Shown here in pieces: positions 16,506 to 62,850 of a DNA stretch of 64,000 nucleotides. Position 1 is the first letter of the stretch. Every line of letters begins with the position of its first letter. The stretch comes from Schmidtea polychroa (taxonomy: Eukaryota), in contig CM097885.1 in NCBI GenBank assembly GCA_044892525.1, forward strand, positions 16,058,001-16,122,000, written 5' to 3'. The translations under genes were made by a program, and so were the position numbers. Below the pieces are notes generated by a model, which was not told the origin of the DNA, searched no databases, and saw nothing but the letters and a program-made list of their open reading frames with translations.

Positions 16506-16546
<41 letters not shown>

Positions 16547-21134: not shown

Positions 21135-24100
21135 TTCAACAATCTGTTGGCATATGTGGGGAAAAGAAAATTATTGCATGCATTACCATTACACACACCA
21201 TGCATCATTACTCCGCTCAGATGCTCCCCATACATACACCAAATGATCATGTACATATTCCCACGCATGAGCCCGTGGTGATGTTCCACGTTGGTGCTGC
21301 TCACACGGGTTGGAAAAGGTTAGCAGGTGAGCCTCTGCCTTAAGACTACTCCTAACCCTTTCTCGGTTCGGGTTCCATGGCGCCTTAGAAGGTCTTACCC
21401 AGTTCTACATACATAATTCAGTCCGACCTTGGTCCAAGGGGACGACCTTGTATTATTACTTACATTCGACATCATCCTTTCACTCGTATCAACTTCGATA
21501 TCCCACCTGTTAAAATCAATCGTCAGAAACAATAAGAGATGTATTAACTCATAACAAATCATTACACGCAGAATAATCAAGAACTGTTTTATATGTAAAC
21601 ATTCAGTATTTATAAACACTCAAGTTCACTTCGGGACCCTGCATAGAACAAGGCACCTTTGAATTGATCAATCGAAGGGTTCTCCGTCCGCAAGCATTTC
21701 GTCGATATCGACCGGTAATCGTTGGTTAGAAATGTACTTGATGCCTTCTGCCGGTATTACACGAAAGATTTCCTTAGTTGGGATGAAATGGCTGGAGGAT
21801 ATTTCTCTTATGGTAGATTGAGCTACAGATAATGACGCCTCGAGAGCAGCCATCGCATCTCGGCGTTTCTGATTTTTCTCGCCCCGGGTTGGCCGTTTCC
21901 GTTTGCGAGACGACGGGGGATTGTCAGTGTGCGGCGTGACGACGGGTGCCACCAGAATTGGAGCCAAGATGGGATCGGTAGGTCCACCTAACAAGGGTTG
22001 ATAACCCGATAAGGTTGGAGCTGGAACGGGCGGTAGGCACGATCCATGCCCTTGGCAGCTCGTAGTAGTCGGTTTGGATACTTGATGATGAAGAGGGAAG
22101 ACGTTCATTTTCTCTATGACGGGAAATTCCCGTACCCGCTTGGCTAGTTCTGCCTCCGTATAAACCTTGTGGAGGGCTTCTGATTGGGCTTTGATTGTAA
22201 GCCGTTGGCAACGGCTCTCCTCCAGCAAGCTATCTCTACAATGTTCTAGCCGCAATATTTTACTTCTCTCCTCCTTCATTTGTGGCGGGGAGAACCACGT
22301 GCCTTCGTAAAGGTCGATTCTTTTCTTTAAAGCCCCGATGTATAGATGGAGCTGCGCGATATCTGCATTTTTATCTGCGCAGGAGAAACATGGGCGAAGA
22401 GTTTTCTCAGCAGTTGTAGGAGTAGTCATCTAAAGAATGAGAAGTCCTTTATTTACATCATTAAAATCCTTTCTACTATTTATTTTTTTTTATAACGTGA
22501 GCTTTATCCTACCACATATGCATACAATCAGGATTGACCCCACATTCATACCTTTGACATCACTTAACTCATCCAAACCGTAAACCTTCAAATCAACTCA
22601 CCCCATCGTTCGTAATGAAAAGAAAATGAGAACCATCAAACGTTATTTCTCTACTCATATTGATATTGTACCTAGGTTCCTGGGTCGACAATTATCATCT
22701 AATCGCAATAAGTTACTTCTTACCACCGATATATTTTTTTCACTTTTATTTATTATTACCTATTAAATGTGGGTCTACTCCCTGGTTTTTATGGCTTATT
22801 GAGTTATGCCTGCTTTAATTTAAAAGAAGTAGTTCCATACTGTTGATGCACTTTGCGCTGTATTAAGTTAAAACGAATTTGTTAAAATTTATTATAAGTA
22901 TTAATTTCCCTCATAAATTATAATTTAATTATTTAAATTTTCGCATTTCATGTTGTCATAACGACGCATATCGGTATGTAGTCGTGTACTGGTTTCAGGC
23001 TCTACCTGATGTGCACTAATGTGTATTATCTCGTCTTATTCAATTATCGCTGTCCCCCCTTAACAACTTCTAGACATTGTGTCTGTTAGTGTACTTTGAT
23101 CTCGTCGTTTATTTATGCATGCCTACTAACACATTCTACTATGACGCAATGATGATGTCGACTCACTCACGTCCCTTGTATTAGTGGATTTATCTGTGTG
23201 TAGGTTTGGGTCTGCTTATCTCAGTTACAGCATTATTAGTAGATGGGCTAGACGAATGGAAGATAAGGAGTCAGACTTATAGAAGTAACGATTGTTGTGA
23301 TTTCAAGATTGCCCAAATCTGTTATCGGTTGAAAAATGGATTTAACTCTTGTGTTGTTGACTATTCTCAAAAACCTAATCGTCTCATCGATTTGGCGCAG
23401 GTCGTTCCACAGTCGAACCGCTGGAATATTTTATCTATGCTGCTTGCTTCTCTACAATAGTCGTTTCTCGATCAGATGGAAAAATTTATCGATAATTGGT
23501 TCGAAATGGTCGAATGATAATTTCCTTTAGGACTATAGTAAGTGCTTATGATTAATTAGAACTTTGCTGTTTACTTTTCTGTCAGGGCGAATCCTTATCG
23601 ATGACAGTAGCTAATCGAAGGTTGATAATTAAGTCTCCTCCACGTCAAATGACATATCACCGCGATGGGTTTAATCGCTAACGCTTTCTTAATTTATCCA
23701 TTCTTAGAAATATAGAATATTCCAGATTTTTATCATTCATCAAGAAAACGAAAATGGACGTTAGAATTATCAGTGAAGTTCGAGAATTTCATCACCCTCA
23801 AGGATAGTCGGTATTCATATTCTGACGACAGGAGGTGACCTAACTCTGAATTGAATATGGCCGAACTCAAACTCGGATTAAATATCGAAAAATGTGGTCG
23901 ATCTCCTAGAATTTCCAGTCAGCGTGTTGTCGGCATCGAAACCGTATCGCTCAGAAGCTTCCTCAATAGAAAGTTTTCGACGGCTAATTTTATGGATATC
24001 ACTCGATGAAAGGATCGTTGACTCGATTTGTTTTCTCTCACAGGGTTTCCTTACCCCTCCCAAACCACCCAAGGACAGTACGCATTTCTGCCTACTACCC

Positions 24101-24451
24101 CTGGACCGTCGTGAAGGATAACTCGACCCGACTTCACTCAAATTCTTCCCCAATAAATGTGCAATTAATAATTCATATTACTGTCAAACAAATATGGAAA
24201 TAATGAAATTTAAAAGAAAAGTCAAAATAAATAAATGTTTACCTGGCGGCCACGCCATCTGGATTCCGGGTATGATGACTCTTGCTAACGTAGGTTTTTA
24301 TATTCATTTAGTAATCATTGTAGTACCCAGGTTCATGTAGATACTTGGCTGGTTCTGTCAATTTCTGGGTATTCATATTCACAAGCTCTCTCCGAAATGC
24401 ATACGAAATTTAGCCGCATCATACCCGAACTCCAGAGGATGTCGTCGCCAG
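21135..24451 (-). mobile_element. Unclassified dispersed element, copy A: structured non-coding leader, 253-aa ORF, structured 3' domain
   Basis: Collinear homology to 50010-53083 across coding and non-coding parts. No RT, transposase, TIR, LTR or poly(A) seen, so mobility is inferred from dispersion only. Confidence 0.55.
21668..22429 (-). CDS. Orphan 253-aa protein (copy A): helical N-terminal domain, Pro-rich linker, basic NLS-like RKRKRP..KRR, conserved C-terminus
   Basis: Intact ORF with the ATG directly after a TTCTTTAG acceptor. Residues 30-88 are 58/59 identical to the 51773 copy despite about 29 synonymous codon differences. Confidence 0.85.
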   Translation of the reverse strand: MTTPTTAEKTLRPCFSCADKNADIAQLHLYIGALKKRIDLYEGTWFSPPQMKEERSKILRLEHCRDSLLEESRCQRLTIKAQSEALHKVYTEAELAKRVREFPVIEKMNVFPLHHQVSKPTTTSCQGHGSCLPPVPAPTLSGYQPLLGGPTDPILAPILVAPVVTPHTDNPPSSRKRKRPTRGEKNQKRRDAMAALEASLSVAQSTIREISSSHFIPTKEIFRVIPAEGIKYISNQRLPVDIDEMLADGEPFD

Positions 24452-27340: not shown

Positions 27341-30233
27341 TTAAAGTTCTTGTTTCGATTTGCATTCATTTGTAGACGGAGCAGTTGCGATATGCATTTG
27401 ACGAATCTTATAGTGACCGTAGGCATAGCTTTCATTAGAATTGAACCAATACCTTTTTTCATCCAAACATTGGAGAGCTCGTTTTTCAGTAATGAAAGTA
27501 TACAACTGATGATTAACACTTCCTATTCTCTTTTGTTGGATGCTCACTGTTCCACCATCAGTATACACTTTTTTATAGGCTTCATGGGTGATATTAGAAT
27601 TTGTAAGACTTATTCCTTTGGCTTTTAGAGTGTTTTTATCTCCTTGGAGTGAGTAGCACTTGGGTCGAAGAAACACCCATTCTTTATATTGATTTCCTTT
27701 ATTCTCATCCTTGAATTTCCCGATTACCGAACAAATTTTATCTGAGAACAATGGATCAGTCACCGGATAATTTGAAGTATCTAGGAGCCCATCGGCAATC
27801 ATTTTTGGATACAGTTGTAAGCGTAAATCAACATTTTTACACTCTAAAAAGAAGGAATCTGTGTCACCGGCTACGATATTAATTTGACAATTGAATTCTT
27901 CTCTATAACTCTGTAGTTCTTTATATTGAAACTGGTACATGCGAAGTTTAGATAAATCAAGTACGGTTTGTCCAATATACATTGGTCTATCTAAACACAC
28001 CATTTCCTTATCAAGTATAACAGCAATGAGATCATCCGCAATCTTGATGCTACGACGAAACATAGGATTACTACAATAAGTTATCAATCTTTTGCTTTTG
28101 CTGCATAATCTCAAATTTATACGTTTCTTAAGGTTTTCCACGGTTTTACCATATAAACTGTTGTTCTTTAACTTATAATAATCTCGCTGAAATGAATCTG
28201 TACTAGCTGCTCTCATTTGAGTATTGTAATCAATATAGCGTTTGAAAATAGCTACTTGCTTGAATTCTACAGCACGATTAACTTTTGTGACTTTTGCGCC
28301 GTAACTCAACCACTCTGTCAAAACTCTACCATTAACTACATAGTTTTTCTTAGGCTCATGAGTTAACAACAGCTTTTCAACTTTACTACCAGGTGGATAA
28401 CAAAGCTCAGGAGCTATAGGTAAATCATCTAGCTTATCTTGTATACTATCAGGAATGACGATGTCAACCTCTAGAACATATCCACGATCTCCATCAAACT
28501 CATCCCCATTTGCACATCTTTCAACAATACCATTCATTTCAGTATGATCATTTATCCATCTAAATTCACCAATAGGAAGTTTTTGCGACAGCGCCCATCC
28601 ATATAAATTATTAACATCTAGGTATGACATTTGTGTTGATTCATCAGCTTCAACATGATGTTTGTTGATAAATGTCATTCCACCACGAATACCAGCTTCA
28701 AATAAACGGTAAAGCTCTGGATCTTGAATGAGTTCTACCGGTTCAGGTAACTGTTTAATAGCTGATGCCCAACTTAATCCGGGTATGGAAACAAACGATA
28801 AAGCCTCAAGTCCATCTTCGTCAAATGTTTTTTCTCTGAAAGCTTCAAAAACATCGGCCAACACAAAAACATCCAACTTGAGATATACTAGCATGTAATC
28901 TAGCAGTGTCTCACAGTTATATTGTCGCCAGATTTGATTTGCATGTATATAATCTTCTTGACTAACTCCCTCCCAAATCGATGGTAATTCTGTTATTGAC
29001 TGTAAAACATCCATTGACGTAGCAATATCATAAGGAAATATGCCTTTACCAGTTATTAGATGCGAATTGAAAATCTTTGAAGTAAGTGGAAGACGTGGCA
29101 AGTTTTTTGATAAATTTGCCAAGCTGCTATTTAAAAATTGTAAAGAATCAATGAATCTAATTCTTCTGCCTTTCGATGTCGCTGTAAGTGTGAGAAACTT
29201 TTCTGTTGATTGAGGAATAACAATTAAATTCCAATCTGGGAATTTTCCAATTGCATATTTTAATATATGATGAATGTCATATCCACGAAGATTATGAAAT
29301 ACAACAGGTAAAGACGGATTGATTCTTCTAGCCAAATTACAATCTTGACACGCTGCTCCGAGATATTGACCAGTAAAATGATCATGATCTCGAACGGGTA
29401 TATTGATAATCTTTTTACAAAGGTAGCAATGAGTTTGAGTCGTGAATTCTTCCTGCTCTTCCCAAGTGAGTTCCATCATTTCCTTTGATCCATTAATTTT
29501 ATACCACGGATAAACTATGTCTGTAGCTATATCATCCAATGCTTGTATGAACTGAATGATACAGTTTTTCCCAACAAATGTTTCATTTCGGATCGGACAA
29601 CCTTGATGGAGAAGCACAAATTCAGATGCAATCGGCTCATGTTTTTGGAAGTGTTTGTCATCTAGAGGTAATATCGATTCAAAGTCCGCGTAGACAACAA
29701 ACTGCTGTTTTATAGTTTTACTCCAATCTTTAAATTCGATATATTTATTCTCTGGCATTGAGTATAGAGTCGTACGCTCCACATTCTTCCTACAAAGACC
29801 TATATGTCTTTCAAAAGCAGGACGTTTTTGAAACCCATGAAGACACGTATGACACCAATGTGATTGGATTCTGACTCCTTCTACTCTATCTCTGTAATTC
29901 AGCAGTCGATCGAGATTAGTTACAGCCAAAAAATGATAATTTAATTCTAAATTTAGTTAATATTTTTAATGATTAAAGGAAATATTACCTTCTTCAATCA
30001 ATAGGAGATATATCTGAGATCCCGTCGAAGTACTTCTATATACCAAGTCAATGAACGGATTCTTGAAAATATCATTAGTTTTTTGTTTAATTGGATCTTT
30101 ATTATATTTGAGAACATTGATCGCTAGATTTGGATTAATTGCTTCAAATTGGCAAATGTTAACCAACTTCATCGGAAACCATTCAAATTTCCATTTTAAG
30201 TCTTAAAAACAAAATTCAATGATTTATGACATT

Positions 30234-30314
<81 letters not shown>

Positions 30315-31386
30315 CCACTTAAGTTATATTTTGTTGTTCTTTCTCTATTCCGACGTATATCATCATAACGTAACACAGCTAGTATGCTATATAAAAAACA
30401 GAATTGATCATTGTTTTGAACATTAATTAAAGCCTGACAGTTTTTCAGGTAATTTGGCGTTTTAATGTAACTTGAACCTAAGTAATCTCTTGATTTATAT
30501 ATATATAATAATGTAAATAATCTTACCAGATACATGTATTATGTCTGATAATTTAGTTAAAATCATAGTAACTTCTAATATTTTATGAATTCTCCACCCA
30601 CTACTTTGTTGAGTGTATTTCTCCAACTTTTCTTTTAATTTTTCAATTCCATCATTAATAAATGAAGATGACATTGTAATTGCTTTATTCGACAAACACC
30701 ATTTTTTAATTTCACCATCCTCTTTGATAAACTCTGCACAAAGTCCAAATTGGATTTTTACTGTCCCCATTCGTTGAATATGATCTTCTATTTCTTTGAT
30801 GAGACAATCTGGAACAACAATGTCAGGAGAATTAATTGCAGATACATCGCTTGTCAATTCAACACGAGAACCGTTTAAGTCAGACTCCCGACGTGGACAC
30901 AATTGTATGTTAGAGTCTCCATTTCCGTAAAATATTGACTTTCGTTTTGTGGTGCCAGAGTTTTGTCTAACTATATTTATAATTAATATTAAACAACTTA
31001 AATAACATAACTTGTAACATATTCTTTAATCTCCTTAGGATCGTATGATGTATTCATTTTCGATTGTACTATAAAAAATTAATAATTGTTAATAGTAGAA
31101 AGAGTATTACTTTTAGTGATCATCCTGCTCTTCGTTTCTTCGAATCTTCTAAGATGGTGTCCGTGTTGTCGTACAAACATTAACCACCTACCTGGTGTTA
31201 TAATGAGACATTCCGGACATATGTAACCCGATAAGGTAGAGTCATTTATCTTGAAATATGATGATGTAACTGATTTACAGTTCTCCACATCTTCATGACT
31301 TTCGGCAATACAAAATTTATATAAACTGCATCCGTTCACTAAAAAATAATCATTAATATTAGATAGAGAATAAAAATTTATTCACT
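27341..31386 (-). CDS. Protein-primed family B DNA polymerase (Maverick type), left-arm copy, spliced, about 1236 aa
   Basis: Mirror image of the right-arm gene. ExoI VYADFES, ExoII FHNLRGYD, ExoIII YLKLDV, PolA YLDVNNLYG, PolB KLKNNSLYGK and PolC AGDTDS are intact. Confidence 0.9.
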
Positions 31387-32614
31387 TATATAAGTTAAAT
31401 TAAAAGTTTAAATGACAAACATTTGAAAAGTTACTGCTTATATATTACACATGATTAAATTCTGACCAATCAAAATCAAGGAAGGGGTAGGAAAAATAAA
31501 TATATTCTGACCAATCAAAATCAAGGAAGGGGTAGGAAAAATAAATGCATTACATTGCAGTATTTTAAAACTTAAATTTTAAAACACATTTTGACGCTAA
31601 AGTTGACTTATTTAACATTTTCATAATAATTTAATAAAAATAATGTGTTGAACTCACAAAGTAATATCATTTTTTTTCATCAAATTGCAAAACAGTAATA
31701 ACGTTTTCATAAAATTGTAACAAAGTAATAACATATTTCAGATAAATTTTCAACAGTTGTAAAATATTTATCAAATTGTAACTAAAATAATAAAAATATT
31801 GCAACAAAGTAATAAAATAATGATGTTAATTGGGACAAATCAATACATTATTTCGAAGACGGACAACAAATTAAAAAAGAATATTGTAATAAATTGTGAA
31901 GTCTTTCAGTAAATTACAACAAAGTAATAACATATTTCGGAAATATTTCACCAGATGTAAAATATTTAAGCAAATTGTTATAAGATTATAAAAATATTGC
32001 AACAAAGTAATAAAATAATACAACATTTTAAACTCTAGATCAATCCATTTTATAGAAAATTAAATTTTATCTCTATAATATATGAATAAATATACAAGGA
32101 AATTACGTTAACGTATAATAAAACATGTGTGTATTACACACAAAACAAGATACATAATTTCTAATCAATCCATTTTATAGAAAATTAAATTTTATCTATA
32201 TATTATATGAATAAAATCCTAAGAAAATTACGTTAACCGCGCGAAAAATACAAATTTATCGTAAAAACATGTGTGTATTACACACAACATACGAGACATA
32301 ATTTTTAATCAAGCTATTTTATAGAAAATTAAATTTTATCTATATATTAAATGAATAAAAATCCAAGAAAATTACGTTAACCGCGCGAAAAAATACAAAT
32401 TTATTGTAAAAACATGTGTGCATTACACACAAAGCACCAAACTGAAATTGTAATTGCGCCGTGTTGTAGAGAATTAAATTCTGCCTATACATGGTTACAC
32501 TTAAATCTCGATCAGACCTGTGAAAAGAGACATAAAAGATAAAAAACAGTAGAGTAGTATGATGTGGGCCCGCCCGGCCAGGAGCCCGCTCGGCCACATA
32601 TACCCCCTCCCCCC

Positions 32615-46240: not shown

Positions 46241-46705
46241 TAAAAAATAATCAGTGGTGAAATTGGGAAAAAAGTTCTTGTAATACATGTTTAAGGATCT
46301 TCGAGGCTTTGTTAGAAGCAATTGTGGCTTTCAGGCCTCCTGAGTCTCAGATGCAGTAGTTGTAATTGTTGAATTAAATGTTTTCACCGAATTTTTGAAT
46401 AATGAACTTGGGGTCCCGATAATGAACAAGTACCACCAATTTACTTAAATCTCGTTTGACATGCGATGGAAACATAACATTCGAGAGTTCAGATAAAGAA
46501 ATTGAGAACTAAAGAAAAAAAAATTTTATATATAATTTCTACTAAATTCATTTTTTGCAAATTCATCTATTATTTTATTTGTATTAATCTGATTAAGAAT
46601 ATCTTTCTCAACATACAAAAGGGCCATATCATTCAATCTCTCTTCTCCCATAATGCTTCTTAAGTAATTTTTCACTGAAAACGATCTTTCTCCTATGCAT
46701 TAGAT

Positions 46706-49481
46706 CAGGCCCCCAGTGTTCATTGATCCACACCATATAACCAGGCCCTTGATAAGCTTTCAGGAATGTATGCAGTTGACGTTAGAGCTACACCATTAGT
46801 ACAAATACGCATTTAATATAAGCGTGGTGGTGCAGCAGTAAACTTCCGGTCACCTCTCCACATTTACACCTCACTGTGAAGTATTTAGTTATATTCTATT
46901 AAGGAAACTTCCAACTTTCATGTAGAGCGTATAATTGTGCAGAGCTGAAGATGATCCCAAGTTCGTTGGTGTGCTACTGCTACTCTAATAGCTGGCCTTT
47001 ATTCAATCCTGTAGGAGAGGTTAGGATTTACTAGTAGCTCTCTCTTAACTGTGAGGATGAGTGTGACTGGAATGAATGCATTAACGCCCTTGTTGTCATA
47101 TTATTAGGCAGGTGAGGTTGTACAATAAAACTCCTTTAGCCAACAGTTCAATTATCAAAAATTATGTTCACTACCTCTATGAACAAAACTTATAATTTTA
47201 TGTTTATATTATAAAAAAAAATCGATAATATTATAAAGTTTATATTATAAAGTTTATAATATTATCGATTTTTTTATGAAATAAATTTGCAATTTCAACC
47301 ACAGTTGAGGATGAGCACTATTACAAAAAAACGAAAAGTTGACAGTGAACACCGAGTATTTAATGATAAGTGGACATCGGATTATCTGTTTGTAGAATCA
47401 AACAATATGCTCGTTTGTCTTGTTTGCTCGCAATCAATTTCCGTTAAAAAGGAATTTAATGTAAGACGGCATTACCAGACTCAGCATGCAGAAAAGTTCG
47501 ATCAGATACAGGGACAATTAAGGAAAGATAGGATCGAATCTCTCCGAAAAGCACTTCTAGGGCAACAGACATTCTTTATCAAAGTTAATAAAGAGGTTGA
47601 GTGTGTTGTGAAGGCGAGTTTCATGATAAGTGAGATATTGCCAAGAAACTAAAATCGTTATCTGATGGGGAGTTTGTCAAAGAATGCATTGATGCTGCTG
47701 TGGATTGTATCTGTCCCGAAAAGAAACAACTTTTCTCGAATATCAGCCTTTCTCGATTTACAATCGTAAGACGAATTGATGATATTGCAAAAAACATTGA
47801 AACAATCTTGAAAGAAAAAGCTGAACTATTTCAAGCATATTCAATATGCCTTGATGAAAGCACGGATATGACAGACACCGCGCAATTTTTGTGCGTGGGG
47901 TTGATCAGGACTTCCACGTTACGGAAGAACTGTTGAAATTAGCGAGCATGAAAGGGACTACAACTGGAGAAGAGGTTTTTGATGAAATCAAAACTGCATT
48001 GGCAGAAAACGGGCTTTTTCTTCCAAAACTAACAGGAATAACGACAGACGGAGCTCCGGCAATGGTTGGAATAAAAAATGGAGTAGTTGGTTTATTGAAG
48101 GCGGAGCTTGTTAAAATGAAAGGAAGTAAGCAATTAATTTGCTTCACATTGCATAATCCACCAAGAGAATTTATGTGTAAAAGAACTAAAGATGGACCAT
48201 GTGATGACAGTTGTTGTGAAAACCGTGAATTTCATAAGATCACGTGGATTGAATAATCGACAATTCAAAGAGTTTCTCACTAGCATTGAGACAGAATACT
48301 CGGATGTAATTTACTTTAGCGAAGTTCGTTGGCTGAGCAGAGGAAAAGTATTGCATCGCTTTTATTGCCTTCGTGAAGAAATTAAACTTTTTATGGAGAT
48401 GAAGTCGAAACCAATTCCGGAGTTATCCGATCCAAATTGGCTACTTGACTTGGCCTTTTTGGTTGACATCACAACGCATCTGAATGATCTAAACACGAAG
48501 TTACAAGGCCGGGATCAACTGATAAATAATCTTTACGATCATATCAAAGGATTTCAGACAAAGCTGAAACTATGGGAGAATCAATTATCAAAGGACATTA
48601 CGGTGTATTTTCCAAATTTAACTGATTGCAAAAATGATGCAAATTTAGCTAACACGAAGAAATTTAATGAACACATAATTGCATTGAAAACACAGTTTTC
48701 TTCAAGATTTGCTGATTTTGCCGAACATGAAAATGATTTCAAACTATTTTCTGAACCATTCAGTGTTAATGTTGAGACAGCACCAGAATCAATGCAAATG
48801 GAGCTCATTGAATTGCAGTGTAATGGCGATCTGAAAAGAAAGTTTCGTGACGTCTCTTTGATTCAATTCTAAAAACTCTACATTTCTCAGAAAGCGTTTC
48901 CATCAATCCGATATCATGCGCTGAAAATGGTCTCACTTTTCCCCAGCACTTACATCTGTGAACAATTCTTTTCTAAGATGAAACAAACAAAGTGCAAAAA
49001 CAGATGTCGGCTCACTGATGATAACTTGTCAAACGAATTACGAGTAGCAACAGCAACTATCAAGGCAAATATTTCAGATTTATGTCGTGATAAGAAGTGT
49101 CAAATGTCACAGACCAAAACCAGAACAAGATTGATATTGATATGTTGGGTATATTTGAGTAGTATATGCAAACTTGAGAAGCATAAAAAATATAAATTCG
49201 AACAATCCAGAGTTTGTGCGAGTAAATAAACTATAAATATGGGATTATTAAAGTTAAATTTGGGTATTTTCATAGTTTTTATATTTTGCCTTCCAATAAC
49301 AACTAGTATATAGTATATAATATATAATATATGCCTAATCATGTAAATTTAAATGATCTTTGCTATTAAAAAGATATATTATTGGAATATACATTAATAA
49401 ATTCGTATTAAATACATCCGGCCCCCGAAACATTTACAAAGACTGAACTGGCCCCTAACAAAAACAAGTTGCTCATGCCTG
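46706..49481 (+). mobile_element. hAT Charlie/SPIN-like DNA transposon with a frameshifted transposase (about 47311-49080); left boundary tentative
   Basis: KKRKVDSEHRVFNDKW..C..C..RRHY..H, LDESTD, ITTDGAPAM, SEVRWLSRG, FPSTYICEQFFS. Right end GTTGCTCATGCCTG; flanks CATTAGAT and GATTAGAT (7/8, central TA). The left TIR matches only in CAGGC. Confidence 0.7.
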
Positions 49482-49485
49482 GATT

Positions 49486-49977
49486 AGATCATCATATGAT
49501 ATAACATAAAACGTGTTTTCTATAAAATTTTGTTTTCTTGAAAAATCATCGCCGACTTCTTTATTTTCATCAAAATTTATTTTCTCTTTTGTCGTCTGCA
49601 TAATTGAAAGACTGGTTTATTCATTTGCTACTTTTTCAACTTTCTCAAAGTCTAGCCTGAAGTTATTGATAAAGACTTTCAAGGATTTTTATAATGCTAA
49701 TTCTTTCATTCAATCAAATTCTTTTGATTGTTGTGATTTGTTCGTAGCATTAATCTTTGTGAAATTGCGTTCCATACTCCTGTCACTAGAATAATTTCAT
49801 ACTTGTTCATTTTTTTTAAATGACTTCGCTCTAACACAGTGACTTTTTCCCTCTTTTGAATTGCAAATTTCATTTATTGCTTCTTATATGTTGCTGTACC
49901 CAAAGTTCACATACAATACTACATATAATACTTTCAAATAATTATGGAATGCATTTTTGTGGCTTTCAACAATTTCA
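49486..49977 (-). pseudogene. ZMYM1-like hAT transposase fragment; with 46363-46510 it forms a ~650-bp block repeated directly at 53074-54485
   Basis: The minus strand reads ..KVFINNFRLDFEKVEK..RKQNFIENTFYVI. Each copy is interrupted by a different later insertion. Confidence 0.55.
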
Positions 49978-50009
49978 TTTATTGATTATTCGTTTTTGAT
50001 TTATGCATA

Positions 50010-53000
50010 GATTTTGCACAAATTTTCAATTTAATTGAGTTAAGATGAGTTAATTGGTCCCTCATGACGGTGCAAGAGCGGTGGCAGAAATGTGGCCGCT
50101 CTTGGGTGTGTCGTGAGGGGTGAAGGAACTCTGTAAGTCAAGATCCAGTTAGGAAATGAATTTTCTTCATCGAGTGCGATCGTTAAAAGTGCATCCCATC
50201 ATTTCTATCAGCAATCTCCAACCGTTGCAAAGATGATTAAATTCCAAAAGGAGAATGATTCACGTTGAGATCGACATTTATATCTAGTCTTGACTTTGTG
50301 AGAATCCACATAAAATGGAAAGACCTTTTCGTGCGTAGCTTGTCTATCAGCATATTTAGAAGGAAAACTTGTTCGACCATAATTCACTAGAAATTCCGAC
50401 ATTTTCCGTAATACACCGCATTTCCGAGATTTGTCCAATATTTCGCATCGAAAGGACGTTAGCGAATGAACCCCTAATTTCATCTATCCGTAGAGTCCGA
50501 GTGGACGTGGAAATCGAGGTTTGACAGGCCACTATCATTAATAACCCGTCGATCTAGATAAAATGTAAACATTCTCCGATAATCAATACAAATACTCGCC
50601 ATAGTCTTGAGGAAAGCTGCTGTCGGCGAGTTTTGAGGGATTATCTTTCTGTTTTGTTCTGTTAGAAGTTGGCTGCAGTCGACCGATAAGAAATTGTCTG
50701 AGAATATTCAGTATACAGATTACTGGGCAACGACACCACATAGACAAGATTGACAGCGATTATCAAGAGCAAACTCTGGTCAGAAGAAATATAATCACTA
50801 AATTAAAGTTCCAACCGATAAAGTGGTGAATAAATCCGACAATTTAGAGAAATCGTTTTTCATAAGTCTAAAAAAAATTAATTTTTATCTTTCAACAGAA
50901 TCTGTTATTAATGCCACGCACAATGTCTAACAAACGTAGCAATACACACAGACAAGTCTGCCCACTCTAGGATAGTGTGTAGGTCGATATCGCCATCACA
51001 TCGAAGTGTAGTATAATAGTTCTAGATTGTGTGCATAAATTAGATAACGACGTCGCGACAATTCAGACGATAAAAATTCTCTTCGTTGTTTACCATTGAG
51101 TAGCGGTAACGAATGACTCCCAATGATAAATGCCGGCAACAATCGCATCTCAAATGAAATCTCATAAATCACCACTTGCATGCACAGGATAGGAAATGAA
51201 GTTATGACATAACAGAACAGTGAGGTTCTCCATGACGACACCTACGTCGCAAATTCAAATAACTCTACAAAATTCTGATAACAATAATTAAAATTTATAA
51301 CTTTTCTAATATATCTATTTCTTTGCACTATAAGGTTGAGAACATCAAAAGAATTTCATTCATTTCCTGTGGCATACAAAATGAGCATCTCTCAATAGGT
51401 CATAACATCAAATGAACCTAATGCAGCTAATGATTAACAGTAATAAAAAATTTATAAAAGTAAAAAACCTACACTTCCCGAACTGGGTAATAAATTAAAT
51501 AAAAATTGTCAACCCTAAAACTTGTAGGACATTGGTAATATAGTAAATGGATTTTTGACAATCTCCGTTTTCTCTTAATTTGCATGAACTGAGTTGATCA
51601 AACATGAGTGTTTGGGGGTGAATAATGGTTTCAAATATTCGCGAGTGGTCAGAGATCCGCTGAGGATCACCGAGTGAAACGCGTGAGGATATTACATAAA
51701 CCACATGATAAACTCGTAAATGATACACCAATGATCACTTCTAACCATGATAGCAAACTTCTTTAACTTTAGATGACCACACCGATCAAATCCGGAAAAG
51801 ATCTTCGTCCGTGTTTCTCCAGTTCGGACAAGAACGAGGATATTAAGAAACTACACGTCTATATCGGGGCCTTAAAGAAACGTATTGATCTATACGAGGG
51901 CACGTGGTTCTCCCCGCCACAAATGAAGGAGGAGCGTAGGAAAATCTTGAGATTGGAGCACTGTCGTGACAGTCTCCTGGAAGAAAGTAGGTGCCAGAGG
52001 CTCACAATAAAAGCCCAATCAGAGGCCCTGCATAAAATTTATACGGACGTCGAGATTGCTAAGAGGGTCCGAGAATATCCAGTTCAAGACGGGATAAATG
52101 TGTTCCCAATCCACCACCAGGCATCCGAGGTCCCACTGACTACCCGCTGCAAAGGGCATGGCTCACAATTGTCTCCCATCCTCGCTTCAGCTCTCTCCAG
52201 TTCTAGGCCCGCGACAAAGGGTCCATCGGACCCCATCTTGGCTCCGATTCTTCAGCCTCGCCAGATGCAACCAACAGTTGAAACCAAGACGCCAAATCGG
52301 AAACGTAAGCGGCCGACGCGAGTTGAGAAAAATAAAAAGCGCAGGGACGCCATTGCCGCGCTAGAGGCTTCGCTATCGGTGGCCCAATCCACCATCAAGG
52401 AAATCTCCAATTCCCATTCAATTCCAAACCAAGAAATATTCCGGGTAGTTCCGGCCGATGGTATCAAGTTCATTGCAGATCGCCGGTTGCCCATGGATAT
52501 AAATAAAATGTTAGCCGAAGGAGAAATTTTCTGATGATCCAACATAACGTCAACGTCAAGTTTAATTCGCCCTAATGGACTTAACTTTGATCCTTGCCTG
52601 CTGACAAATTCATCTATGCCTTTTATTTTGTTCATTAGATATCGGTGTAATACGTTTTGGTGTAATCCATGTGTGTGGTGGAATTAATATAAATTTTCTT
52701 GGCATTTGATGAGTTATTTATGAGATTGTTGTACAAATTGTATGGCTTGATTGCTAAATCGAATGTCAGTCATCGGATGAAGGTCGTCCCCTTGAACCAG
52801 GGTCGGACCGAGTTATGTGTGAGTGTGGGTAAGGCCTTCTATGGCACCTTGGAACCCGAACCGAGAGGGGGTTAACAGTAGTCCTAAGGCAGGGGCTCAC
52901 CTGTTAATCAACTCCAACCCATGTGAGCATCACCAACGTGTAAGATCTCCACAGGCTCACATGAGGGAATATCAGTAAAGTCATTATGGGTATGCTGGAG

Positions 53001-53083
53001 AAGGGCCAGAGCCGAATGAAGCTGAGTATATGCCTTAGGATAATCCTTTCCATTCTCCCCACATACGCCAACATAATTGTTGA
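50010..53083 (+). mobile_element. Unclassified dispersed element, copy B (homolog of 21135-24451)
   Basis: Shared blocks throughout the non-coding leader (GAAA hairpin, ttcatcgagtg, caaccgataa, tacacacaga) and the 3' domain (ggtcgtcccc, ggaacccgaaccgag, ccccacatayg). Confidence 0.55.
51773..52534 (+). CDS. Orphan 253-aa protein (copy B)
   Basis: Intact ORF of the same length as copy A. The ATG directly follows the AG of a candidate 57-nt intron (51716-51772). Confidence 0.85.
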   Translation: MTTPIKSGKDLRPCFSSSDKNEDIKKLHVYIGALKKRIDLYEGTWFSPPQMKEERRKILRLEHCRDSLLEESRCQRLTIKAQSEALHKIYTDVEIAKRVREYPVQDGINVFPIHHQASEVPLTTRCKGHGSQLSPILASALSSSRPATKGPSDPILAPILQPRQMQPTVETKTPNRKRKRPTRVEKNKKRRDAIAALEASLSVAQSTIKEISNSHSIPNQEIFRVVPADGIKFIADRRLPMDINKMLAEGEIF

Positions 53084-53517
53084 ATTAAATGTTTTCACCG
53101 AATTTTTGAATAATGAACTGGGGGTCCCGAAAATGAACAAGTACCACCAATTTACTTAAATCTCGTTTGACATGCGATGGAAACATAACATTCGAGAGTT
53201 CAGATAAAGAAAATGAGAACTAGATCATTATATGAAATAACATAAAACGTGTTTTCTATAAAATTTTGTTTTCTTGAAAAATCATCGCCGACTTCTTTAT
53301 TTTCATCAAAAATTATTTTCTCTTCTGTCGTCTGCATAATTGAAAGATTAGTTAATTCATTTGCTACTTTTTCAACTTTCTCAAAGTCTAGCCTGAAGTT
53401 ATTGATAAAGACTTCCAAGGATTTTTATAATGTTAATTCTTTCATTCAATCAAATTCTTTTGATTGTTGTGATTTGTTCGTAGCATTAATCCTTTGTGAA
53501 ATTGCGTTCCATACTCC

Positions 53518-54280
53518 CAGTGCTCGAAGTGAGGCGGGATATTATCCCGGCATTGATTATGTAGGCGGAATTGCATCCCGGCACTTCATTTCATATAATC
53601 TATAGGTTTATCCCGGTACTTATTTCATTTTATAGGCACACAAATACTGCAATTAAAGTCACACATAGTACATCCATATATGTATGTATATATATATTCT
53701 TTATTCTCTATTCTCTATTCAATTAAGAATTTCCCAAGCAGCAGTAATGGATAGGTAGGTATATTCTCTTATTTATTTTAGTTAAACCAGCAAGTTGTTT
53801 GTTGAGTTATTTATACTGCGACCCCCTCTATATATAATGTGTGCATGATTTCACATGCAGAGAGGTGTTATAATTAACGTGATAAGAAAACATATATGTG
53901 TTACGCAGATATACATACACATGCACATACTCTGAGTAAGACGTTGACGCTTTATATTTGAAACAAAATTTCCGATTATTTATCAGACAAATTTACACAT
54001 GCAAAAAATCTCTGTCATTTTGCTTGGTTAAAAATGAGAATCCCGCAGGGATTTACCCACCCCCCAAAATTGTTTGACACCCCCCCCCACATTAAAACAG
54101 GTAAACCCCCTGAAACTTATGATTAAATGGGTGGACACCCCCCCCCCCAAAAAAAAATTTGTTGGACACCCCCCAAAGTTTTGCAACACCCCCAACTGAA
54201 AATTTCTGCATAAAAGCCTGGAATCCCGGGTGCCACAGCATGCCTATCCCGGCACATATTTTGTTCCACTTCGAGCACTG
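53518..54280. mobile_element. Non-autonomous hAT-type MITE, 763 bp
   Basis: 14-bp TIR CAGTGCTCGAAGTG/CACTTCGAGCACTG and 8-bp TSD CATACTCC. The empty site is visible in the paralogous block at 49773-49780. Confidence 0.9.
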
Positions 54281-55761
54281 CATACTCCTGTCACTAGAAT
54301 AATTTCATACTTGTTCATTTTTTTTAAATGACTTCGCTCTAACACAGTGACTTTTTCCCTCTTTTGAATTGCAAATTTCATTTATTGCTTCTTATATGTT
54401 GCAGTAACCAAAGTTCACATACAATACTACATATAATACTTTCAAATAATTATGGAATGCAATTTTGTGGCTTTCAACAATTTCAAGCTGTTTCTTAATT
54501 TTATTTCGTTTTTCTGCGCCACTTTTAAAACTTTTCTATGTGCTTACTAGAGTAGATGTCACCCAACCCCCTGGTAAAATCTCAAGGTCGATTAGGAATT
54601 TTAGATAAGTGTATATAAAAAATGCTTAGTTTCCATGGAAATGAGCTCAAAACTCTCTAAATTAAAATATAGGTCACGCCATAATATAACATTTTCTGTA
54701 TATTATGAAACTAAGACAAACTTATATTATAGAATTAAACTCATATTCTTTAACACATGGGAACACAATGAACAAAAGCATAAGAAAAGTAAATTATGCA
54801 AATTAACAAAATATGCTTAGAAATATTTTGAAAAATATACTTTATTACAGAAAATTATTTTAATATCGGAAATCAACTGAATAGGAAATATACAGGAATA
54901 TTTACAGGAATATACTGGGAAACCCTCCAAACTCTAGAAAATTAAATATCCCAACTCAAAAAATTTCCCCAAATTTTAAAAGCTCCTAAAATTAATTTTC
55001 GCAAAAAATAACGTAATTTTATATATGGTCAAAATTAACTTGTAAATTTTTTTTAAAATATTACTCTATTATAGGAAATCAACCGTATAGGAAATATACA
55101 AGATTATTACAAGAAAAATCTTCCCAACTCAAATTATTACACAAATGCACTCAGTCTGGGACACATTGAGGAGCCATTGAAAGCTTGGTCACACCGCGTG
55201 CCAATACTCATGCTCATTGCGGAAAATCCAGTCAAATCGCCTTCATTGCCCGCATAAACATTACACAAATGCACTCAGTCAGGGACACATTTCTCGCTAT
55301 CCGTTCTGAGTAAGCATCCGTTTTGTACAGCTCCTTTCATGCATGCCATCCGATATGTCAGTGTAGGATCTTGTCTGTGTACAAGTTTCCACACCTTCAA
55401 ATTGAGGATCTAGAAAGGATAAAATCGAATTCCCTCAACTCATCATTAATTCATATTCATACACAAGGTAACACCATAGGTAATACTTAGCTAAATATTC
55501 TATGCGAATGATTCTTCCTTTCCTAATATTGTAGTTTGTAGGCTACGGAATAAGTGATATGCAATTATATTTGTGTCATTGTTGATATAACCTGTAGCCC
55601 CCTCATTCCCTCCATTTACCATGTCAGTTAGTGTCAAATACTTTATTCTTTCATGGCATAAAATCCTTCATTCTATAAACAAATAAGGAAGACTAAATAA
55701 ATAAGCGTTTACGACCGAATATTCCTTTATCTCGTTAAACTTTCCTTATTTACTTTCAGTT

Positions 55762-55970
55762 ATGTGCGAGCCGAGTCTACCGCCGAAAGGGCCAAGACCC
55801 TGTTTTTCCTGAGCAGACAAAAATGCCGACATAAAGAAACTGCACGAGTACATAGGGGCTTTAAAGAAATGCATTAAAACATACGAATGCACGTGGTTCT
55901 CCCCGCCACAAATGAAGGAGGTATTGAGGTTGGAGCACTGCAGAGACAGTCTCCTTGAAGAAAGTAGATA
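55762..55970 (+). pseudogene. 5' fragment (copy D) of the 253-aa ORF family
   Basis: RPCFS*ADKNADIKKLHEYIGALKKCIKTYECTWFSPPQMKEVLRLEHCRDSLLEESR; ATG 2 nt after a ctttcag acceptor; premature stop. Confidence 0.8.
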
Positions 55971-59413: not shown

Positions 59414-59932
59414 ATGTCAGAAGCACGTCAACATTTACAACAGCTGGAAAATGAAATTCGGCAGATTGAAACAAAATTAGCAAATGAAAAATATATAAAT
59501 TATGGATTTTTTGAATGGCAAATCGATAAATTTTCACAACAAAAGAGAAATGAAAATATTTACAGCGAGGCATTTTATTCCGGGCCAATCGGTTACAAAA
59601 TTTGCTTGTGGGTGGGGACTAGTGGTGATTGGGGTGATTTGGTTGCGGCTGGTTTCTGTTTGATGCGTGGGGCAAATGATGAGCAATTGGATTGGCCGTT
59701 CAATCAATTAGTGACAATCGATGTGATCGATCCAGCAAATGGCAGCATTTATATGAGCAAGTCAATGAAATATTCAGATTGCCCTCATGATGCAGCTGGA
59801 TGGAGGAAACCGTCACACGACAGAAATAATTCAATTGGTATTTATTATAATTATCCTGATGACAGCTCAACCTATAAATTAGCAGCCAAAAGTGATAAAT
59901 TGCTGCTCAGGTGCAGAATTGAAAAATTATGA
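59414..59932 (+). CDS. TRAF MATH-domain exon, paralog of 9479-10018; upstream RING exons not found in the window
   Basis: Near-identical MATH sequence. It sits in a duplicated block (about 9500-11815 versus 59445-62220) that includes the downstream gypsy relic. Confidence 0.8.
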   Translation: MSEARQHLQQLENEIRQIETKLANEKYINYGFFEWQIDKFSQQKRNENIYSEAFYSGPIGYKICLWVGTSGDWGDLVAAGFCLMRGANDEQLDWPFNQLVTIDVIDPANGSIYMSKSMKYSDCPHDAAGWRKPSHDRNNSIGIYYNYPDDSSTYKLAAKSDKLLLRCRIEKL

Positions 59933-61369
59933 CAAATTTAAAAAAACATTTCAATAAAGAATTTATTTTGGGTTTTGATTTGTTTTATTGTTTGCCTTTT
60001 TTTATTATATTTTTATTATATTTATTATACGAGATAATTATTGTGGTAATTATTGTCATTCTCGCCTTCCATCCGATATCATCATCACGTGGCGGAGCGC
60101 TCACAGCAAATGCCAATTGCAATATCAACATCAATTATATAATTAAATAAAAGCAATTTAATTAAATCAAAAACATTTAATATAAATTAATTTGAATAAT
60201 TATTATAATTAAATTAATAATTAATTTGAAAGAAATGAAATTAAAATTCACCCGAATATAAGCGCTGACAAATCGCCTCAACAAATCAAGCGCTCCTATG
60301 ACGAGTGGAACTGACGAGAAAACCGCCGCTGATGTTATATGAGTTTTGGATAAATTATTGCTGTACTGAATGGCAGTAAAATGCAGCTAAATGCAATACT
60401 AACACCGCGTTATATCAAATTGATAAATGCCTTGAAGTTTCGCCAGCTATTTGTGAGGCATTTAAACGGAAATCAGCAACAACAATACTGATCAAATGTT
60501 CGAAAATTGCTTTCACATCTGTTTTGATAAGTTTACCAAAATTAGAGCTGTCGATTCGATGAGGGCAATCAATGCTTTCTAAACTCTATAACATTCTGTT
60601 ACGAATTCTTTTAATAATTAAACGAATTACCTTATTTAATCTTTCTTAAAATTTAGATCTCTTAAAGGTCTCGAGTCAGATTTACTAATAATATTATTGT
60701 TAATATAATAATAAAAATAATTAGATTTGTGCTGAGATCCTTTTTAAGAGCTATGACCTGATTTAATATTAAATAATGTAACATTTCATAAATTTATTTA
60801 CTTTTCATTCGCTAAATTTTCAAATACAATATTATTAAAACAAAAAAGATTTCATGTAAATTATTATTTAAATTAACAAATTTGATAAATTTTATGAATT
60901 AATTTTACTTATTAACAAACAACGAAATTTATCTTGAAATCTTGAAATTATAAAATAAAGAGGAAATCATTTAGGAAATTTATAAATTAGGTTTTAAAGT
61001 GAAGTCAATACCTTGAGGTGATAAGTGACTATTATGGGGTTTAAGGGGGTAATTTATAAAATTTTTAAATTATAATCTTAAATTAAACGAAAGTTGAGCA
61101 TACATAATAAAGTAATTTACATTAGCGAAGTTGGTACTTGATTGATGGTCATATTACTTGAGAGACATAAATAAAATTATAATTTCAAAATCCAAAATTT
61201 GAGTTAGACGTTTATAGGTAAACAATTTACATTAATACAATTAGGATGAAATTAGTAGTTGTAGCACTTTAGGGGTAAAAAATAAAATTTGTAAATTATA
61301 TTTTGATTCTCAAATACAAGATGAATAAATATATAGATAATCTATATTAGTGAAATTCTTAATAAGTAT

Positions 61370-62850
61370 ATGATTCCTAGCAATACACGAAGCAATCAAA
61401 CACTTCCAACATTTACTCGAAGGACGAAACTTTAAAATATTCACAGATCACAAACCGCTAACTAACGCAATCGAAATGAAGAATCCCTAACCAAGGCAGT
61501 TTAGACAAATCAACTTCATTTTACAATTCAACTGCACAATAAACTACGTAGCGGGAAAATCAAACATAGCATCTGACGCTCTATCAAGAAAAGAAAGTGA
61601 TATAAACTCCCTGGAATTCGAAGAGATAATCGAATTGGATCAAATTAAATTCAAACAAAACGAAACAATTAACAAACTCCCCACTAAACACAGTTTGAAA
61701 CTACAAGAACTCAACGGAGTAAGGCAGACGTCTCCAACGAAATCAACAAACAAATATTACTCCCGGAGGAATTCCGCGAAAACTGCATCGAAAAGATACA
61801 CAAGAAATATCACTCCTGAAACAAAGTTATATTCGAACTAATACACAAATTTTATGTTTGGCCTAACATGCGGAAAGACATCAAAAACTGCGTCAAGAGT
61901 TGTCACAGCTGCCAATTAAACAAGTAAACTTCCCAAGCAGCGAAGTCTTCGAAACAATACACACAGATATGATAAAATCACTACCACCAAACGACAACTA
62001 CAAATACCTCCTGACAATTATATACAGGAAACCAACTGGTTCGAAGTAATCTCAATAAACGAAATCACCGTAAAAAATATATGTGAAATGATTGAATTAA
62101 TTGAATAGCTCGTTATGACCGACCGAAAACAATCATAACCGATCAAGGCAGACAATTCGAATCAGAAATGTTCAAATTATTCTGCAACAAATACAACATC
62201 AAAAGGAACCGAACAACAGCTAACAACCCACAATAGAGCGGAAAAATCGAACGGTTCCAAGGAAGATTAAAAGAAAACATAAGAATAAAAGCCAATGATC
62301 AAAATTTGTTAAATCATCTACCCACAATACTAATCGGACTGAGAAATAGTCCAAGCTCAATAGATAATGAAAGTCCAGCATACAAGGTTTTCGGAAAAGC
62401 AACAAATCTACCATCACTCAAAAATTAAAAACAGCAGATAACACAGAAACAAACAAACAAACAACTAACAATAAAAACGGAAATACAGAAAAAAACCCAA
62501 AAGAAATATTAAAAAGGAGATCGGACTCTGAATTGGATGGAAAAACAGTACTAACAACATCTTTTTATTTCATCATAATAAAAAAACCATTCACAAAACG
62601 TTTCCAATCCAAATATGAAGGTCCATCCAAACTCCTAGAAATTAACAAAAACGTCGCCACAATAATCAAAAAAACAACAAAAATGAAAATAAACATAAGA
62701 CGAATAAAACCTTATCACCTGAACGAAAACCCACAAAACAATCCACCAGAAAACAAACACAAACACAAACGAAAACACAACCAAATCACAAAAACATCAC
62801 ATTTCCCCACAAAACCTCAATCAAACTATTTGACAAAGATACAATAATCA
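61370..62850 (+). pseudogene. Ty3/gypsy RNase H-integrase relic (longer paralog of 10975-11820); polypurine tract at about 63131-63141
   Basis: KIFTDHKPL, ITDQGRQFESE and QSKYEGP..LLEI..NIRRIKPY occur in broken frames; aaagggggaag precedes TGT at 63142. Confidence 0.7.

What the first reader, a model, noticed from the sequence alone, without database searches (positions are those of the whole stretch)
50059..50119. GAAA-capped hairpin in the orphan element leader with textbook covariation
Seen: copy B is CAAGAGCGGU-G-GCA-GAAA-UGU-G-GCCGCUCUUG (50073-50104); copy A is CAGGGGUAGUA-G-GCA-GAAA-UGC-G-UACUGUCCUUG (24103-24070, -). Over the 10 shared pairs there are 2 double compensatory changes, 4 Watson-Crick/G-U swaps and none disruptive. 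The G-G loop and GNRA cap are invariant, and a 10-bp outer stem is present in B. The G-U pairs work only on the ORF strand. Known: GNRA loops typically dock into receptors in large folded RNAs. Inference: part of a large functional RNA such as a ribozyme, IRES, packaging signal or RNP scaffold.
Basis: partly seen in the sequence, partly recalled or inferred. Interest (0 to 1): 0.75.

Follow-up and report, generated by a model that had tools for sequence, protein, structure and literature searches.

The report
Conserved RNA rod before an orphan gene
The hairpin is real: an 85-base RNA rod, kept by selection in two very old copies of a small LTR-flanked mobile element, sits in a non-coding leader directly against a likely splice donor, and it looks like a protein-recognition or regulatory hairpin rather than part of a ribozyme.

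Summary
At 50073-50104 (+) and 24103-24070 (-) the two copies form the quoted GAAA-capped stem, with 2 double and 4 one-sided pair-keeping changes and an invariant G-G mismatch. It is the tip of a longer rod: 50047-50131 (-51.7 kcal/mol, z -10.8) and 24129-24043 (-43.8 kcal/mol, z -6.4). The rod folds well only on the ORF strand. "Textbook covariation" is overstated for two sequences: P is about 0.05 for the inner stem and about 3e-4 for the whole rod. However, neutral sites between the copies are saturated, so the rod's survival implies selection.

Context: each copy is a collinear 3.1-kb unit. It holds the rod, then a GT donor motif one base after the last pair, then a roughly 1.6-kb unconserved stretch ending in an AG acceptor directly before the ATG of a 253-aa ORF, then a conserved 3' block. 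Copy B lies between 97-98% identical LTR-like repeats.

The ORF is helical with a basic stretch and is under purifying selection. Its only relatives are chimeric gene models. Rfam gives nothing, and no larger conserved fold surrounds the rod.

Best reading: a cis-acting recognition hairpin that controls splicing, translation or RNA selection. The function is inferred. No further copies could be retrieved.

The parts
50047..50131 (+). Copy B: full RNA rod. It has a basal helix, an outer helix, a conserved G-rich internal loop, a covarying inner helix, a G-G mismatch, a 3-bp apical stem and a GAAA loop.
   Evidence: (-51.7 kcal/mol, z -10.8)
50073..50104 (+). Copy B: the inner hairpin as quoted in the finding
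24043..24129 (-). Copy A: full RNA rod, homologous to the rod of B
   Evidence: (-43.8 kcal/mol, z -6.4)
50133..50138 (+). Copy B: splice-donor-like motif (GT plus 4 bases), starting two bases after the last pair of the rod
   Evidence: The same motif type sits at the same alignment columns in A.
24036..24041 (-). Copy A: splice-donor-like motif at the same position relative to the rod
50133..51772 (+). Copy B: putative intron of 1640 nt. It is about 50% identical to A, which is near background, has no conserved coding frame, and ends in a pyrimidine tract plus AG directly before the ATG.
22430..24041 (-). Copy A: putative intron of 1612 nt
51773..52534 (+). Copy B: intact 253-aa ORF, helical N-terminal domain plus a Lys/Arg-rich helix
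21668..22429 (-). Copy A: intact 253-aa ORF, 71% identical in protein to B
52743..52979 (+). Copy B: conserved GC-rich 3' non-coding block. It is 81% identical to A, more than the ORF. Local hairpins show 9 double changes on this strand against 2 on the other.
21248..21486 (-). Copy A: the same 3' block
53057..53073 (+). Copy B: conserved 17-mer abutting the downstream repeat. Read on the opposite strand it contains TGG and resembles a primer-binding site.
21145..21161 (-). Copy A: the same 17-mer, with one transition
46363..49977 (.). Upstream LTR-like repeat of B. It is in two pieces (46363-46511 and 49485-49977), split by a roughly 3-kb nested insertion (46512-49484) flanked by a TA duplication.
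53074..54485 (.). Downstream LTR-like repeat of B. It is in two pieces (53074-53517 and 54281-54485), split by a 763-bp inverted-repeat element with an 8-bp duplication. The pieces are 96.6-98.5% identical to the upstream repeat, and the repeat has short terminal inverted repeats.
55785..55969 (+). Third copy: a fragment of the 5' part of the ORF with one premature stop, one in-frame deletion and a 3' truncation. It keeps an AG acceptor-like motif just before its ATG. No rod was found near it.

Best explanation
The hairpin is the tip of an ~85-nt RNA rod in the non-coding first exon (leader) of a small gene carried by an LTR-bounded, non-autonomous mobile element. Shown: the rod is conserved in structure on the ORF-sense strand although neutral sites between the two copies are saturated. 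Its helices vary with pair-keeping changes, while its apical module (G-G mismatch, 3 bp, GAAA) and a G-rich internal loop are fixed in sequence. Its 3' base lies one nucleotide from a donor-like GT. An acceptor-like AG sits directly before the ORF's ATG in all three copies. Inferred: the leader is spliced to the ORF, which would leave the start codon two bases after the rod. The fixed loops would be a docking site for a protein, most plausibly the element's own helical, Lys/Arg-rich product. Binding at the rod would then mask the donor and/or the start codon, setting the balance between spliced mRNA and full-length RNA, or marking the RNA for selection. In kind this is a Rev/RRE-like or packaging-signal-like cis element, not a catalytic RNA.
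For: Rod and strand asymmetry. Pair counts and slid controls. Simulation: (whole rod P about 3e-4). Independent consensus fold. Neutral saturation and purifying selection on the ORF: (codon-position differences 63/37/150 over 252 codons). The leader outside the rod and the intron are about 50% identical, the rod region 65-68%. Donor and acceptor motifs are conserved in position. No other conserved reading frame in the unit. ORF model with helices 18-41, 48-89, 92-101 and a basic helix 183-214. Distant relatives keep an arginine-rich stretch. Mobile-element context: LTR-like repeats with terminal inverted repeats and a 4-of-5 matching flanking pentamer. The relatives are gene models fused to ten unrelated host domains.
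Against: Only two copies exist in the window, and no further DNA copies could be retrieved, so covariation statistics are weak for any single helix. Splicing, transcription start and strand of expression are not observed. No binding evidence exists. The basic stretch of the window's ORF is lysine-rich rather than a classic arginine-rich motif. The canonical primer-binding-like motif lies on the strand opposite to the ORF and rod. The rod may therefore sit in an antisense gene of the element rather than in its genomic-RNA leader. Copy A has no clear LTRs.
Confidence: 0.4

Rival explanations
1. Packaging or dimerisation-type signal. The rod would be the handle by which the structural protein of an autonomous partner element selects this non-autonomous element's full-length RNA, as retroviral leader stem-loops near the major splice donor do.
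For: The unit has no polymerase or integrase but is flanked by LTR-like repeats. The rod lies about 70 nt inside the upstream repeat and next to a donor motif. It is one of only three conserved non-coding blocks.
Against: In this orientation there is no primer-binding-like motif after the upstream repeat and no purine tract before the downstream one. The TGG-containing conserved 17-mer is on the other strand. No partner element was identified.
Confidence: 0.2
2. Translation-control structure. In the spliced mRNA a very stable rod directly precedes the AUG, so initiation would need bypass of the rod (a shunt of the plant-pararetrovirus type) or internal entry, giving low or regulated expression.
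For: The rod is -44 to -52 kcal/mol. Under the splice model the AUG starts two bases after its last pair in both copies. Short upstream ORFs precede the rod in both copies. The shunt architecture is described in PMC5902531 and PMC2241666 (abstracts only).
Against: The short ORF ends about 9 nt before the rod in B but about 35 nt before it in A, so the take-off geometry is not conserved. The transcription start is unknown. Sequence-fixed loops are not needed for a mere barrier.
Confidence: 0.15
3. Part of a large folded or catalytic RNA (ribozyme), with the GAAA loop docking into a receptor.
For: There is a GNRA cap and fixed internal loops. A second conserved, structured non-coding block lies at the 3' end of the unit.
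Against: No Rfam family matches at gathering scores or at E up to 10 near either copy. The consensus fold is an unbranched rod with nothing robust around it. The 1.6 kb after it is unconserved.
Confidence: 0.05
4. Small-RNA precursor (miRNA-like hairpin overlapping a splice site), or a DNA-level palindrome with no RNA role.
For: The rod is a long, nearly perfect hairpin of about 35 bp.
Against: Both arms differ at many positions between the copies while the loop is fixed, the opposite of a miRNA pattern. There are 6-7 G-U pairs per copy, and the fold collapses on the other strand in A, which argues against a DNA palindrome. A 4-nt apical loop is unusual for such precursors (my own knowledge).
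Confidence: 0.05

Closest known systems
Retroviral and LTR-retroelement leader stem-loops around the major splice donor (packaging, dimerisation and donor hairpins)
   Same: A stable, conserved hairpin in a non-coding leader just inside an LTR-like repeat. It abuts a splice-donor motif, so it would be present in both spliced and unspliced RNA.
   Different: No primer-binding site on this strand and no gag or pol downstream. The only ORF lies behind the putative intron. No sequence or Rfam relation.
Basic-peptide/hairpin recognition pairs (phage lambda N with boxB; lentiviral Rev with the RRE high-affinity stem). This is a resemblance from my own knowledge, not a tool hit.
   Same: The same element carries a GNRA-type capped stem with a purine-purine mismatch and fixed loops, and also encodes a helical protein with a basic helix. 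In those systems binding decides the fate of incompletely spliced or read-through RNA.
   Different: No homology was found. Pfam REV appears only as a sub-threshold hit in one distant relative, P0004. Binding is untested. The window's basic stretch is mixed Lys/Arg.
Antisense, spliced genes transcribed from a retroviral 3' LTR (the deltaretrovirus HBZ type; my own knowledge)
   Same: If the primer-binding-like 17-mer marks the true polarity, the rod, intron and ORF form a spliced gene on the strand opposite to the element's genomic RNA, starting at the edge of an LTR. This would explain why the intron is retained in all copies.
   Different: The element has no sense-strand genes at all. Polarity is unproven. 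There is no protein similarity.
Non-autonomous LTR retrotransposons (LARD, TRIM and TR-GAG types)
   Same: LTR-like direct repeats, a short internal region without polymerase, nested insertions, and a family of diverged copies.
   Different: The internal region is a single intron-containing orphan gene with structured 5' and 3' ends. Canonical priming signals fit only the strand opposite to that gene.
Ribosome-shunt leaders of plant pararetroviruses (PMC5902531, PMC2241666)
   Same: Short upstream ORFs, then a very stable stem, then the start codon right after the stem base (under the splice model).
   Different: The spacing between the short ORF and the stem is not conserved between the two copies. 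The host is different (an AT-rich eukaryote that I could not identify). No experimental link.

Membership tests
Any curated RNA family (Rfam 15) | Covariance-model score at or above the family's gathering threshold | tested here: not met
   no match in the whole window; at E up to 10 only unrelated chance hits, none over the rod.
Self-cleaving ribozymes (hammerhead, HDV-like, twister, pistol, hatchet and others) | Catalytic core and multi-helix junction or pseudoknot | tested here: not met
   No hit to any of their Rfam models. The consensus fold is an unbranched rod. Pseudoknotted cores can escape such models, so this is strong but not absolute.
Self-cleaving ribozymes | Site-specific self-cleavage | not testable with these tools
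   Needs RNA-end data.
LTR retrotransposon (non-autonomous) | Two long direct terminal repeats of high identity with short terminal inverted repeats | tested here: met
   Copy B: 96.6-98.5% identity and inverted 9-mers at both ends of each repeat. Copy A: not met; only about 7 and 13 bases of the repeat ends are recognisable.
LTR retrotransposon (non-autonomous) | Target-site duplication | tested here: inconclusive
   The flanking pentamers match at 4 of 5 positions.
LTR retrotransposon (non-autonomous) | Primer-binding site next to the 5' LTR and a purine tract next to the 3' LTR, on the transcribed strand | tested here: inconclusive
   The ORF and rod strand has neither. The opposite strand has a conserved TGG-containing 17-mer next to one repeat and an A-rich run next to the other. 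No tRNA sequence was available to test complementarity (no tRNA gene in the window).
Retroviral-type packaging signal | Located in the leader between the primer-binding site and gag, near the major donor | tested here: inconclusive
   Near a donor motif: yes. Primer-binding site upstream and gag downstream: absent.
Retroviral-type packaging signal | Specific binding by the structural protein and selective encapsidation | not testable with these tools
   No data.
Basic-peptide/RNA hairpin pair (Rev-RRE or N-boxB kind) | The element encodes a protein with a basic RNA-binding helix | tested here: inconclusive
   A basic helix 183-214 is predicted and relatives carry arginine runs. No family hit above threshold. 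No PDB or fold match.
Basic-peptide/RNA hairpin pair (Rev-RRE or N-boxB kind) | Specific protein-hairpin binding | not testable with these tools
   No data.
miRNA-type precursor | One arm conserved in sequence, loop free to vary | tested here: not met
   Both arms vary while the loop is invariant.
Ribosome-shunt leader | Short ORF ending a few bases before a stable stem, start codon just after it | tested here: inconclusive
   B: the short ORF ends about 9 nt before the rod. A: about 35 nt before it. The AUG follows the rod only if the splice model is right.

The most novel reading that the evidence does not exclude
An invertebrate-type LTR element whose whole interior is one intron-containing gene on the strand opposite to its genomic RNA. 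The gene has its own structured leader rod, recognised by the gene's own basic protein. That would be a self-contained RNA-protein switch (Rev/RRE-like in logic, HBZ-like in layout) belonging to a previously undescribed mobile gene family with no recognisable protein domains.
Probability: 0.15. Interest if true: 0.7.

Novelty: new member of a known kind. Interest (0 to 1): 0.45.

Why it matters
Structured leader hairpins that decide the fate of a mobile element's RNA are well known in retroviruses and a few retrotransposons. This one belongs to an undescribed family. Its protein has no domain, fold or named relative, and the RNA has no Rfam family. The layout is unusual: the rod touches the donor, the start codon would touch the rod after splicing, and the priming signals lie on the other strand. 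If the self-recognition idea holds, the element would be a compact natural example of RNA-structure-coupled control of splicing and translation in an invertebrate mobile element. It would also explain why an orphan ORF is kept intact across saturating divergence. If it does not hold, it is still a clean candidate for a new Rfam cis-regulatory family.

Tried and rejected
- **Rfam:** I ran it at gathering scores on the whole window and at E up to 10 on both copies and on the 3' block. Nothing relevant came back.
- **ORF, family and structure searches:** Pfam and PDB sequence searches found nothing. The first word search found nothing. The exhaustive profile search found 11 distant relatives, all chimeric models. 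An AlphaFold model searched against the viral and PDB fold libraries gave no match.
- **ORF, remaining word searches:** The second search, with an 11-sequence alignment, was swamped by words from the fused host domains and was in effect wasted. The third found only UniParc-only entries.
- **DNA for relatives:** Exact-product look-ups for five relatives and window ORFs all failed. Cluster look-up gave UniParc numbers only, with no organism.
- **More copies of the rod or ORF elsewhere:**
  - Viral contigs: 6 pattern hits, all chance, none folding like the rod.
  - Metagenome contigs: none by pattern or by protein.
  - Viral contigs by protein, and phage records: none.
  - GTDB genomes: one hit, a chance match inside GC-rich bacterial sequence.
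- **More copies in the window:** nhmmer and a covariance model with filters off found only A and B.
- **LTRs around copy A:** only weak similarities of about 60-67%.
- **3' block:** it is not unusually stable as a single sequence (z -0.9 and -1.5), but it does show compensatory changes.
- **Rejected ideas:**
  - Spliced-leader RNA gene: in my recollection of such RNAs the leader exon is short and the donor sits inside the first stem, which is not this layout.
  - Pol III small RNA: there is no conserved T-run terminator.
  - Primer-binding site inside the rod's 5' arm: the TGG is present in B only.
- a search for a GNRA-receptor motif and a test of the 17-mer against tRNA 3' ends.
- **Source organism:** it was not identified.
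Full report
**1. The observation**

The quoted letters and coordinates are exact for both copies. On the two-sequence alignment A7, the 10 shared inner pairs comprise 4 invariant pairs, 4 with a one-sided Watson-Crick/G-U change and 2 with changes on both sides. None is broken. The G-G mismatch, the 3-bp apical stem and the GAAA loop are the same in both copies.

The hairpin is only the tip of a longer rod.
- In B the rod runs 50047-50131, in A 24129-24043 on the minus strand.
- It has a basal helix with a third double change.
- It has an outer helix.
- A G-rich internal loop has the same letters in both copies.

Folding energies:

| Copy | ORF-sense strand | z | Opposite strand | z |
|---|---|---|---|---|
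| B | -51.7 kcal/mol | -10.8 | -31.1 kcal/mol | -6.7 |
| A | -43.8 kcal/mol | -6.4 | -20.9 kcal/mol | -1.3 |

In A the rod is lost on the opposite strand. RNAalifold finds the same rod without my input.

**2. Is it more than chance?**

With two sequences the shuffle control has little power (63 of 500 shuffles reach the observed value). The slid-partner control is clear: 92.8% of cells are paired, against 40-54% when partners are slid.

In my simulation the observed substitutions are dropped at random into the stem columns. All 10 inner pairs survive with P about 0.05. At least 31 of 34 pairs of the whole rod survive with P about 3e-4. This is conservative, because it takes the transition excess in paired columns as given (17:4, against 6:5 in unpaired columns).

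More telling is the age of the divergence between the two copies. In the neighbouring ORF, third codon positions differ at 150 of 252 codons, against 37 at second positions. Neutral sites are therefore near saturation. The leader outside the rod and the following 1.6 kb are about 50% identical, which is close to background for this composition. A rod that keeps 31 of 34 pairs across that distance is under selection. "Textbook covariation" is still too strong a phrase for two sequences.

**3. What surrounds it**

A and B are collinear units of about 3.1 kb: B 49971-53090 (+) and A 24210-21129 (-). Only four blocks are conserved.
- **The rod region.**
- **An intact 253-aa ORF** (51773-52534 and 22429-21668; 71% protein identity).
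- **A GC-rich 3' block** (52743-52979). It is 81% identical, more than the ORF. Local hairpins carry 9 double changes on the ORF strand against 2 on the other.
- **A 17-mer at the very end** (53057-53073).

No other frame is conserved.

One base after the last pair of the rod, both copies have a donor-like GT motif (50133 and 24041). Directly before the ATG, both copies and a third ORF fragment (55785-55969) have a pyrimidine tract plus AG. The simplest reading is a 1640-nt (B) and 1612-nt (A) intron that joins the leader to the ORF. The start codon would then lie two bases after the rod. This is inferred from motifs, not observed.

**4. The unit is a mobile element**

B lies between direct repeats of about 640 bp that are 96.6-98.5% identical. 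The repeats carry inverted 9-mers at their ends, and the flanking pentamers match at 4 of 5 positions. Each repeat holds a nested insertion.
- The upstream repeat holds a roughly 3-kb element with a TA duplication.
- The downstream repeat holds a 763-bp inverted-repeat element with an 8-bp duplication.

The A/B homology stops within about 7 and 13 bases of the inner edges of these repeats. The unit therefore equals the interior of the LTR-like element.

A has no clear repeats of its own. I cannot explain this, given its intact ORF.

The ORF has no Pfam, PDB or fold match. The exhaustive profile search found 11 distant relatives matching residues about 13-127 of the ORF. Nine of the ten I scanned against Pfam are gene models in which this domain is fused to an unrelated host domain: a transporter, CRAL/TRIO, the glycine-cleavage P protein, a subtilase, an ABC ATPase, actin, ribosomal protein L21, a tyrosine phosphatase and a hAT transposase. 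The tenth, P0009, has no Pfam domain. A twelfth relative found by the last word search is fused to a tenth host domain (PF00900). That pattern is the mark of a mobile ORF swallowed by gene predictors. These relatives exist only as UniParc entries, without organism or DNA.

The predicted fold is three N-terminal helices, a disordered middle and a basic helix. The relatives carry arginine runs, and some carry a PPPY motif.

**5. Polarity problem**

On the ORF and rod strand there is no primer-binding-like sequence after the upstream repeat and no purine tract before the downstream one. On the opposite strand, the conserved 17-mer reads as a TGG-containing motif two to three bases from the repeat, and an A-rich run abuts the other repeat.

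Two readings remain.
- The element's full-length RNA is the ORF strand and priming is unusual.
- The rod, intron and ORF form an antisense, spliced gene inside the element. That would explain why the intron is retained in every copy.

The RNA-structure evidence for the rod and for the 3' block favours a functional ORF-sense RNA in either case.

**6. Mechanism**

The helices vary while two loops are fixed. This is the pattern of a scaffold that presents recognition surfaces, not of a mere thermodynamic barrier or a catalytic core. The rod touches the donor and, after splicing, the start codon.

I therefore commit to a cis-acting recognition hairpin whose occupancy controls splicing and/or initiation, or marks the RNA for selection. 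The element's own basic protein is the most economical ligand. Only the structure, its conservation, its strand and the motif geometry are shown. Splicing, binding and effect are inferred.

Rivals, each with its refutation in its own section:
- a packaging-type signal for a partner element;
- a shunt- or IRES-type translation structure;
- part of a large ribozyme;
- a small-RNA precursor or DNA palindrome.

**7. Comparison and novelty**

The rod works like retroviral leader hairpins and like basic-peptide/hairpin pairs, but it is a member of no known family by any test I could run. I file it as a new member of a known kind: a cis-acting structured RNA of a retroelement-like unit.

**8. Limits and slips**

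- No further DNA copies could be obtained from any collection. The source organism was not identified. N runs were left untouched.
- The nhmmer profiles and the covariance model were used only to search.

Noticed in passing
window 26601-32614 and 40054-34033: A 6-kb inverted duplication at 98.9% identity. Each arm carries an identical 862-codon ORF with a type-B (organellar/viral) DNA polymerase domain and a weak endonuclease VII hit, which looks like Polinton/Maverick-type sequence.
   Followed up: partly
window 52743-52979 and 21486-21248: The 3' non-coding block of the element is more conserved than its ORF (81% identity). It shows local hairpins with 9 double compensatory changes on the ORF strand. 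It may be a second structured RNA of the same unit.
   Followed up: partly
window 50168-50178 and the matching place in copy A (about 24005-23995, minus strand): An 11-base run about 35 nt inside the putative intron is identical in both copies although the rest of the intron is unconserved. Its role is unknown.
   Followed up: no
window 46512-49484: A roughly 3-kb insertion with a TA duplication sits inside the upstream LTR-like repeat. It carries a 226-aa coiled-coil-like ORF (48192-48872) with only a sub-threshold MAP65/ASE1 hit.
   Followed up: partly
window 53518-54280: A 763-bp element with terminal inverted repeats and an 8-bp duplication (hAT-like MITE) sits inside the downstream repeat.
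   Followed up: partly
window 24262-24450: A short inverted-repeat element lies just upstream of copy A. It may have disrupted whatever repeat once flanked A.
   Followed up: no
window 9506-11857 and 59450-62221: A segmental duplication (88-92% identity) that contains TRAF/MATH-domain exons (ORFs 9458-10018 and 59414-59932).
   Followed up: partly
window 5864-6556: An intronless 230-aa ORF with a proteasome alpha-subunit domain and an Asn-rich tail, possibly a retrocopy.
   Followed up: no
window 13300-14754 and 25622-26305: Other mobile-element remains: a Ty3-type RNase H plus integrase ORF, and a hAT transposase C-terminal fragment.
   Followed up: partly
window about 16500-17600 and 18460-19200: Tandem or satellite-like repeats. 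The second array has a period near 57 bp judging from BLAST offsets.
   Followed up: no
L007 4482-4536: A 24-base gapped pattern taken from the rod matched once in a GC-rich bacterial MAG contig. It does not fold like the rod and is a chance hit.
   Followed up: yes
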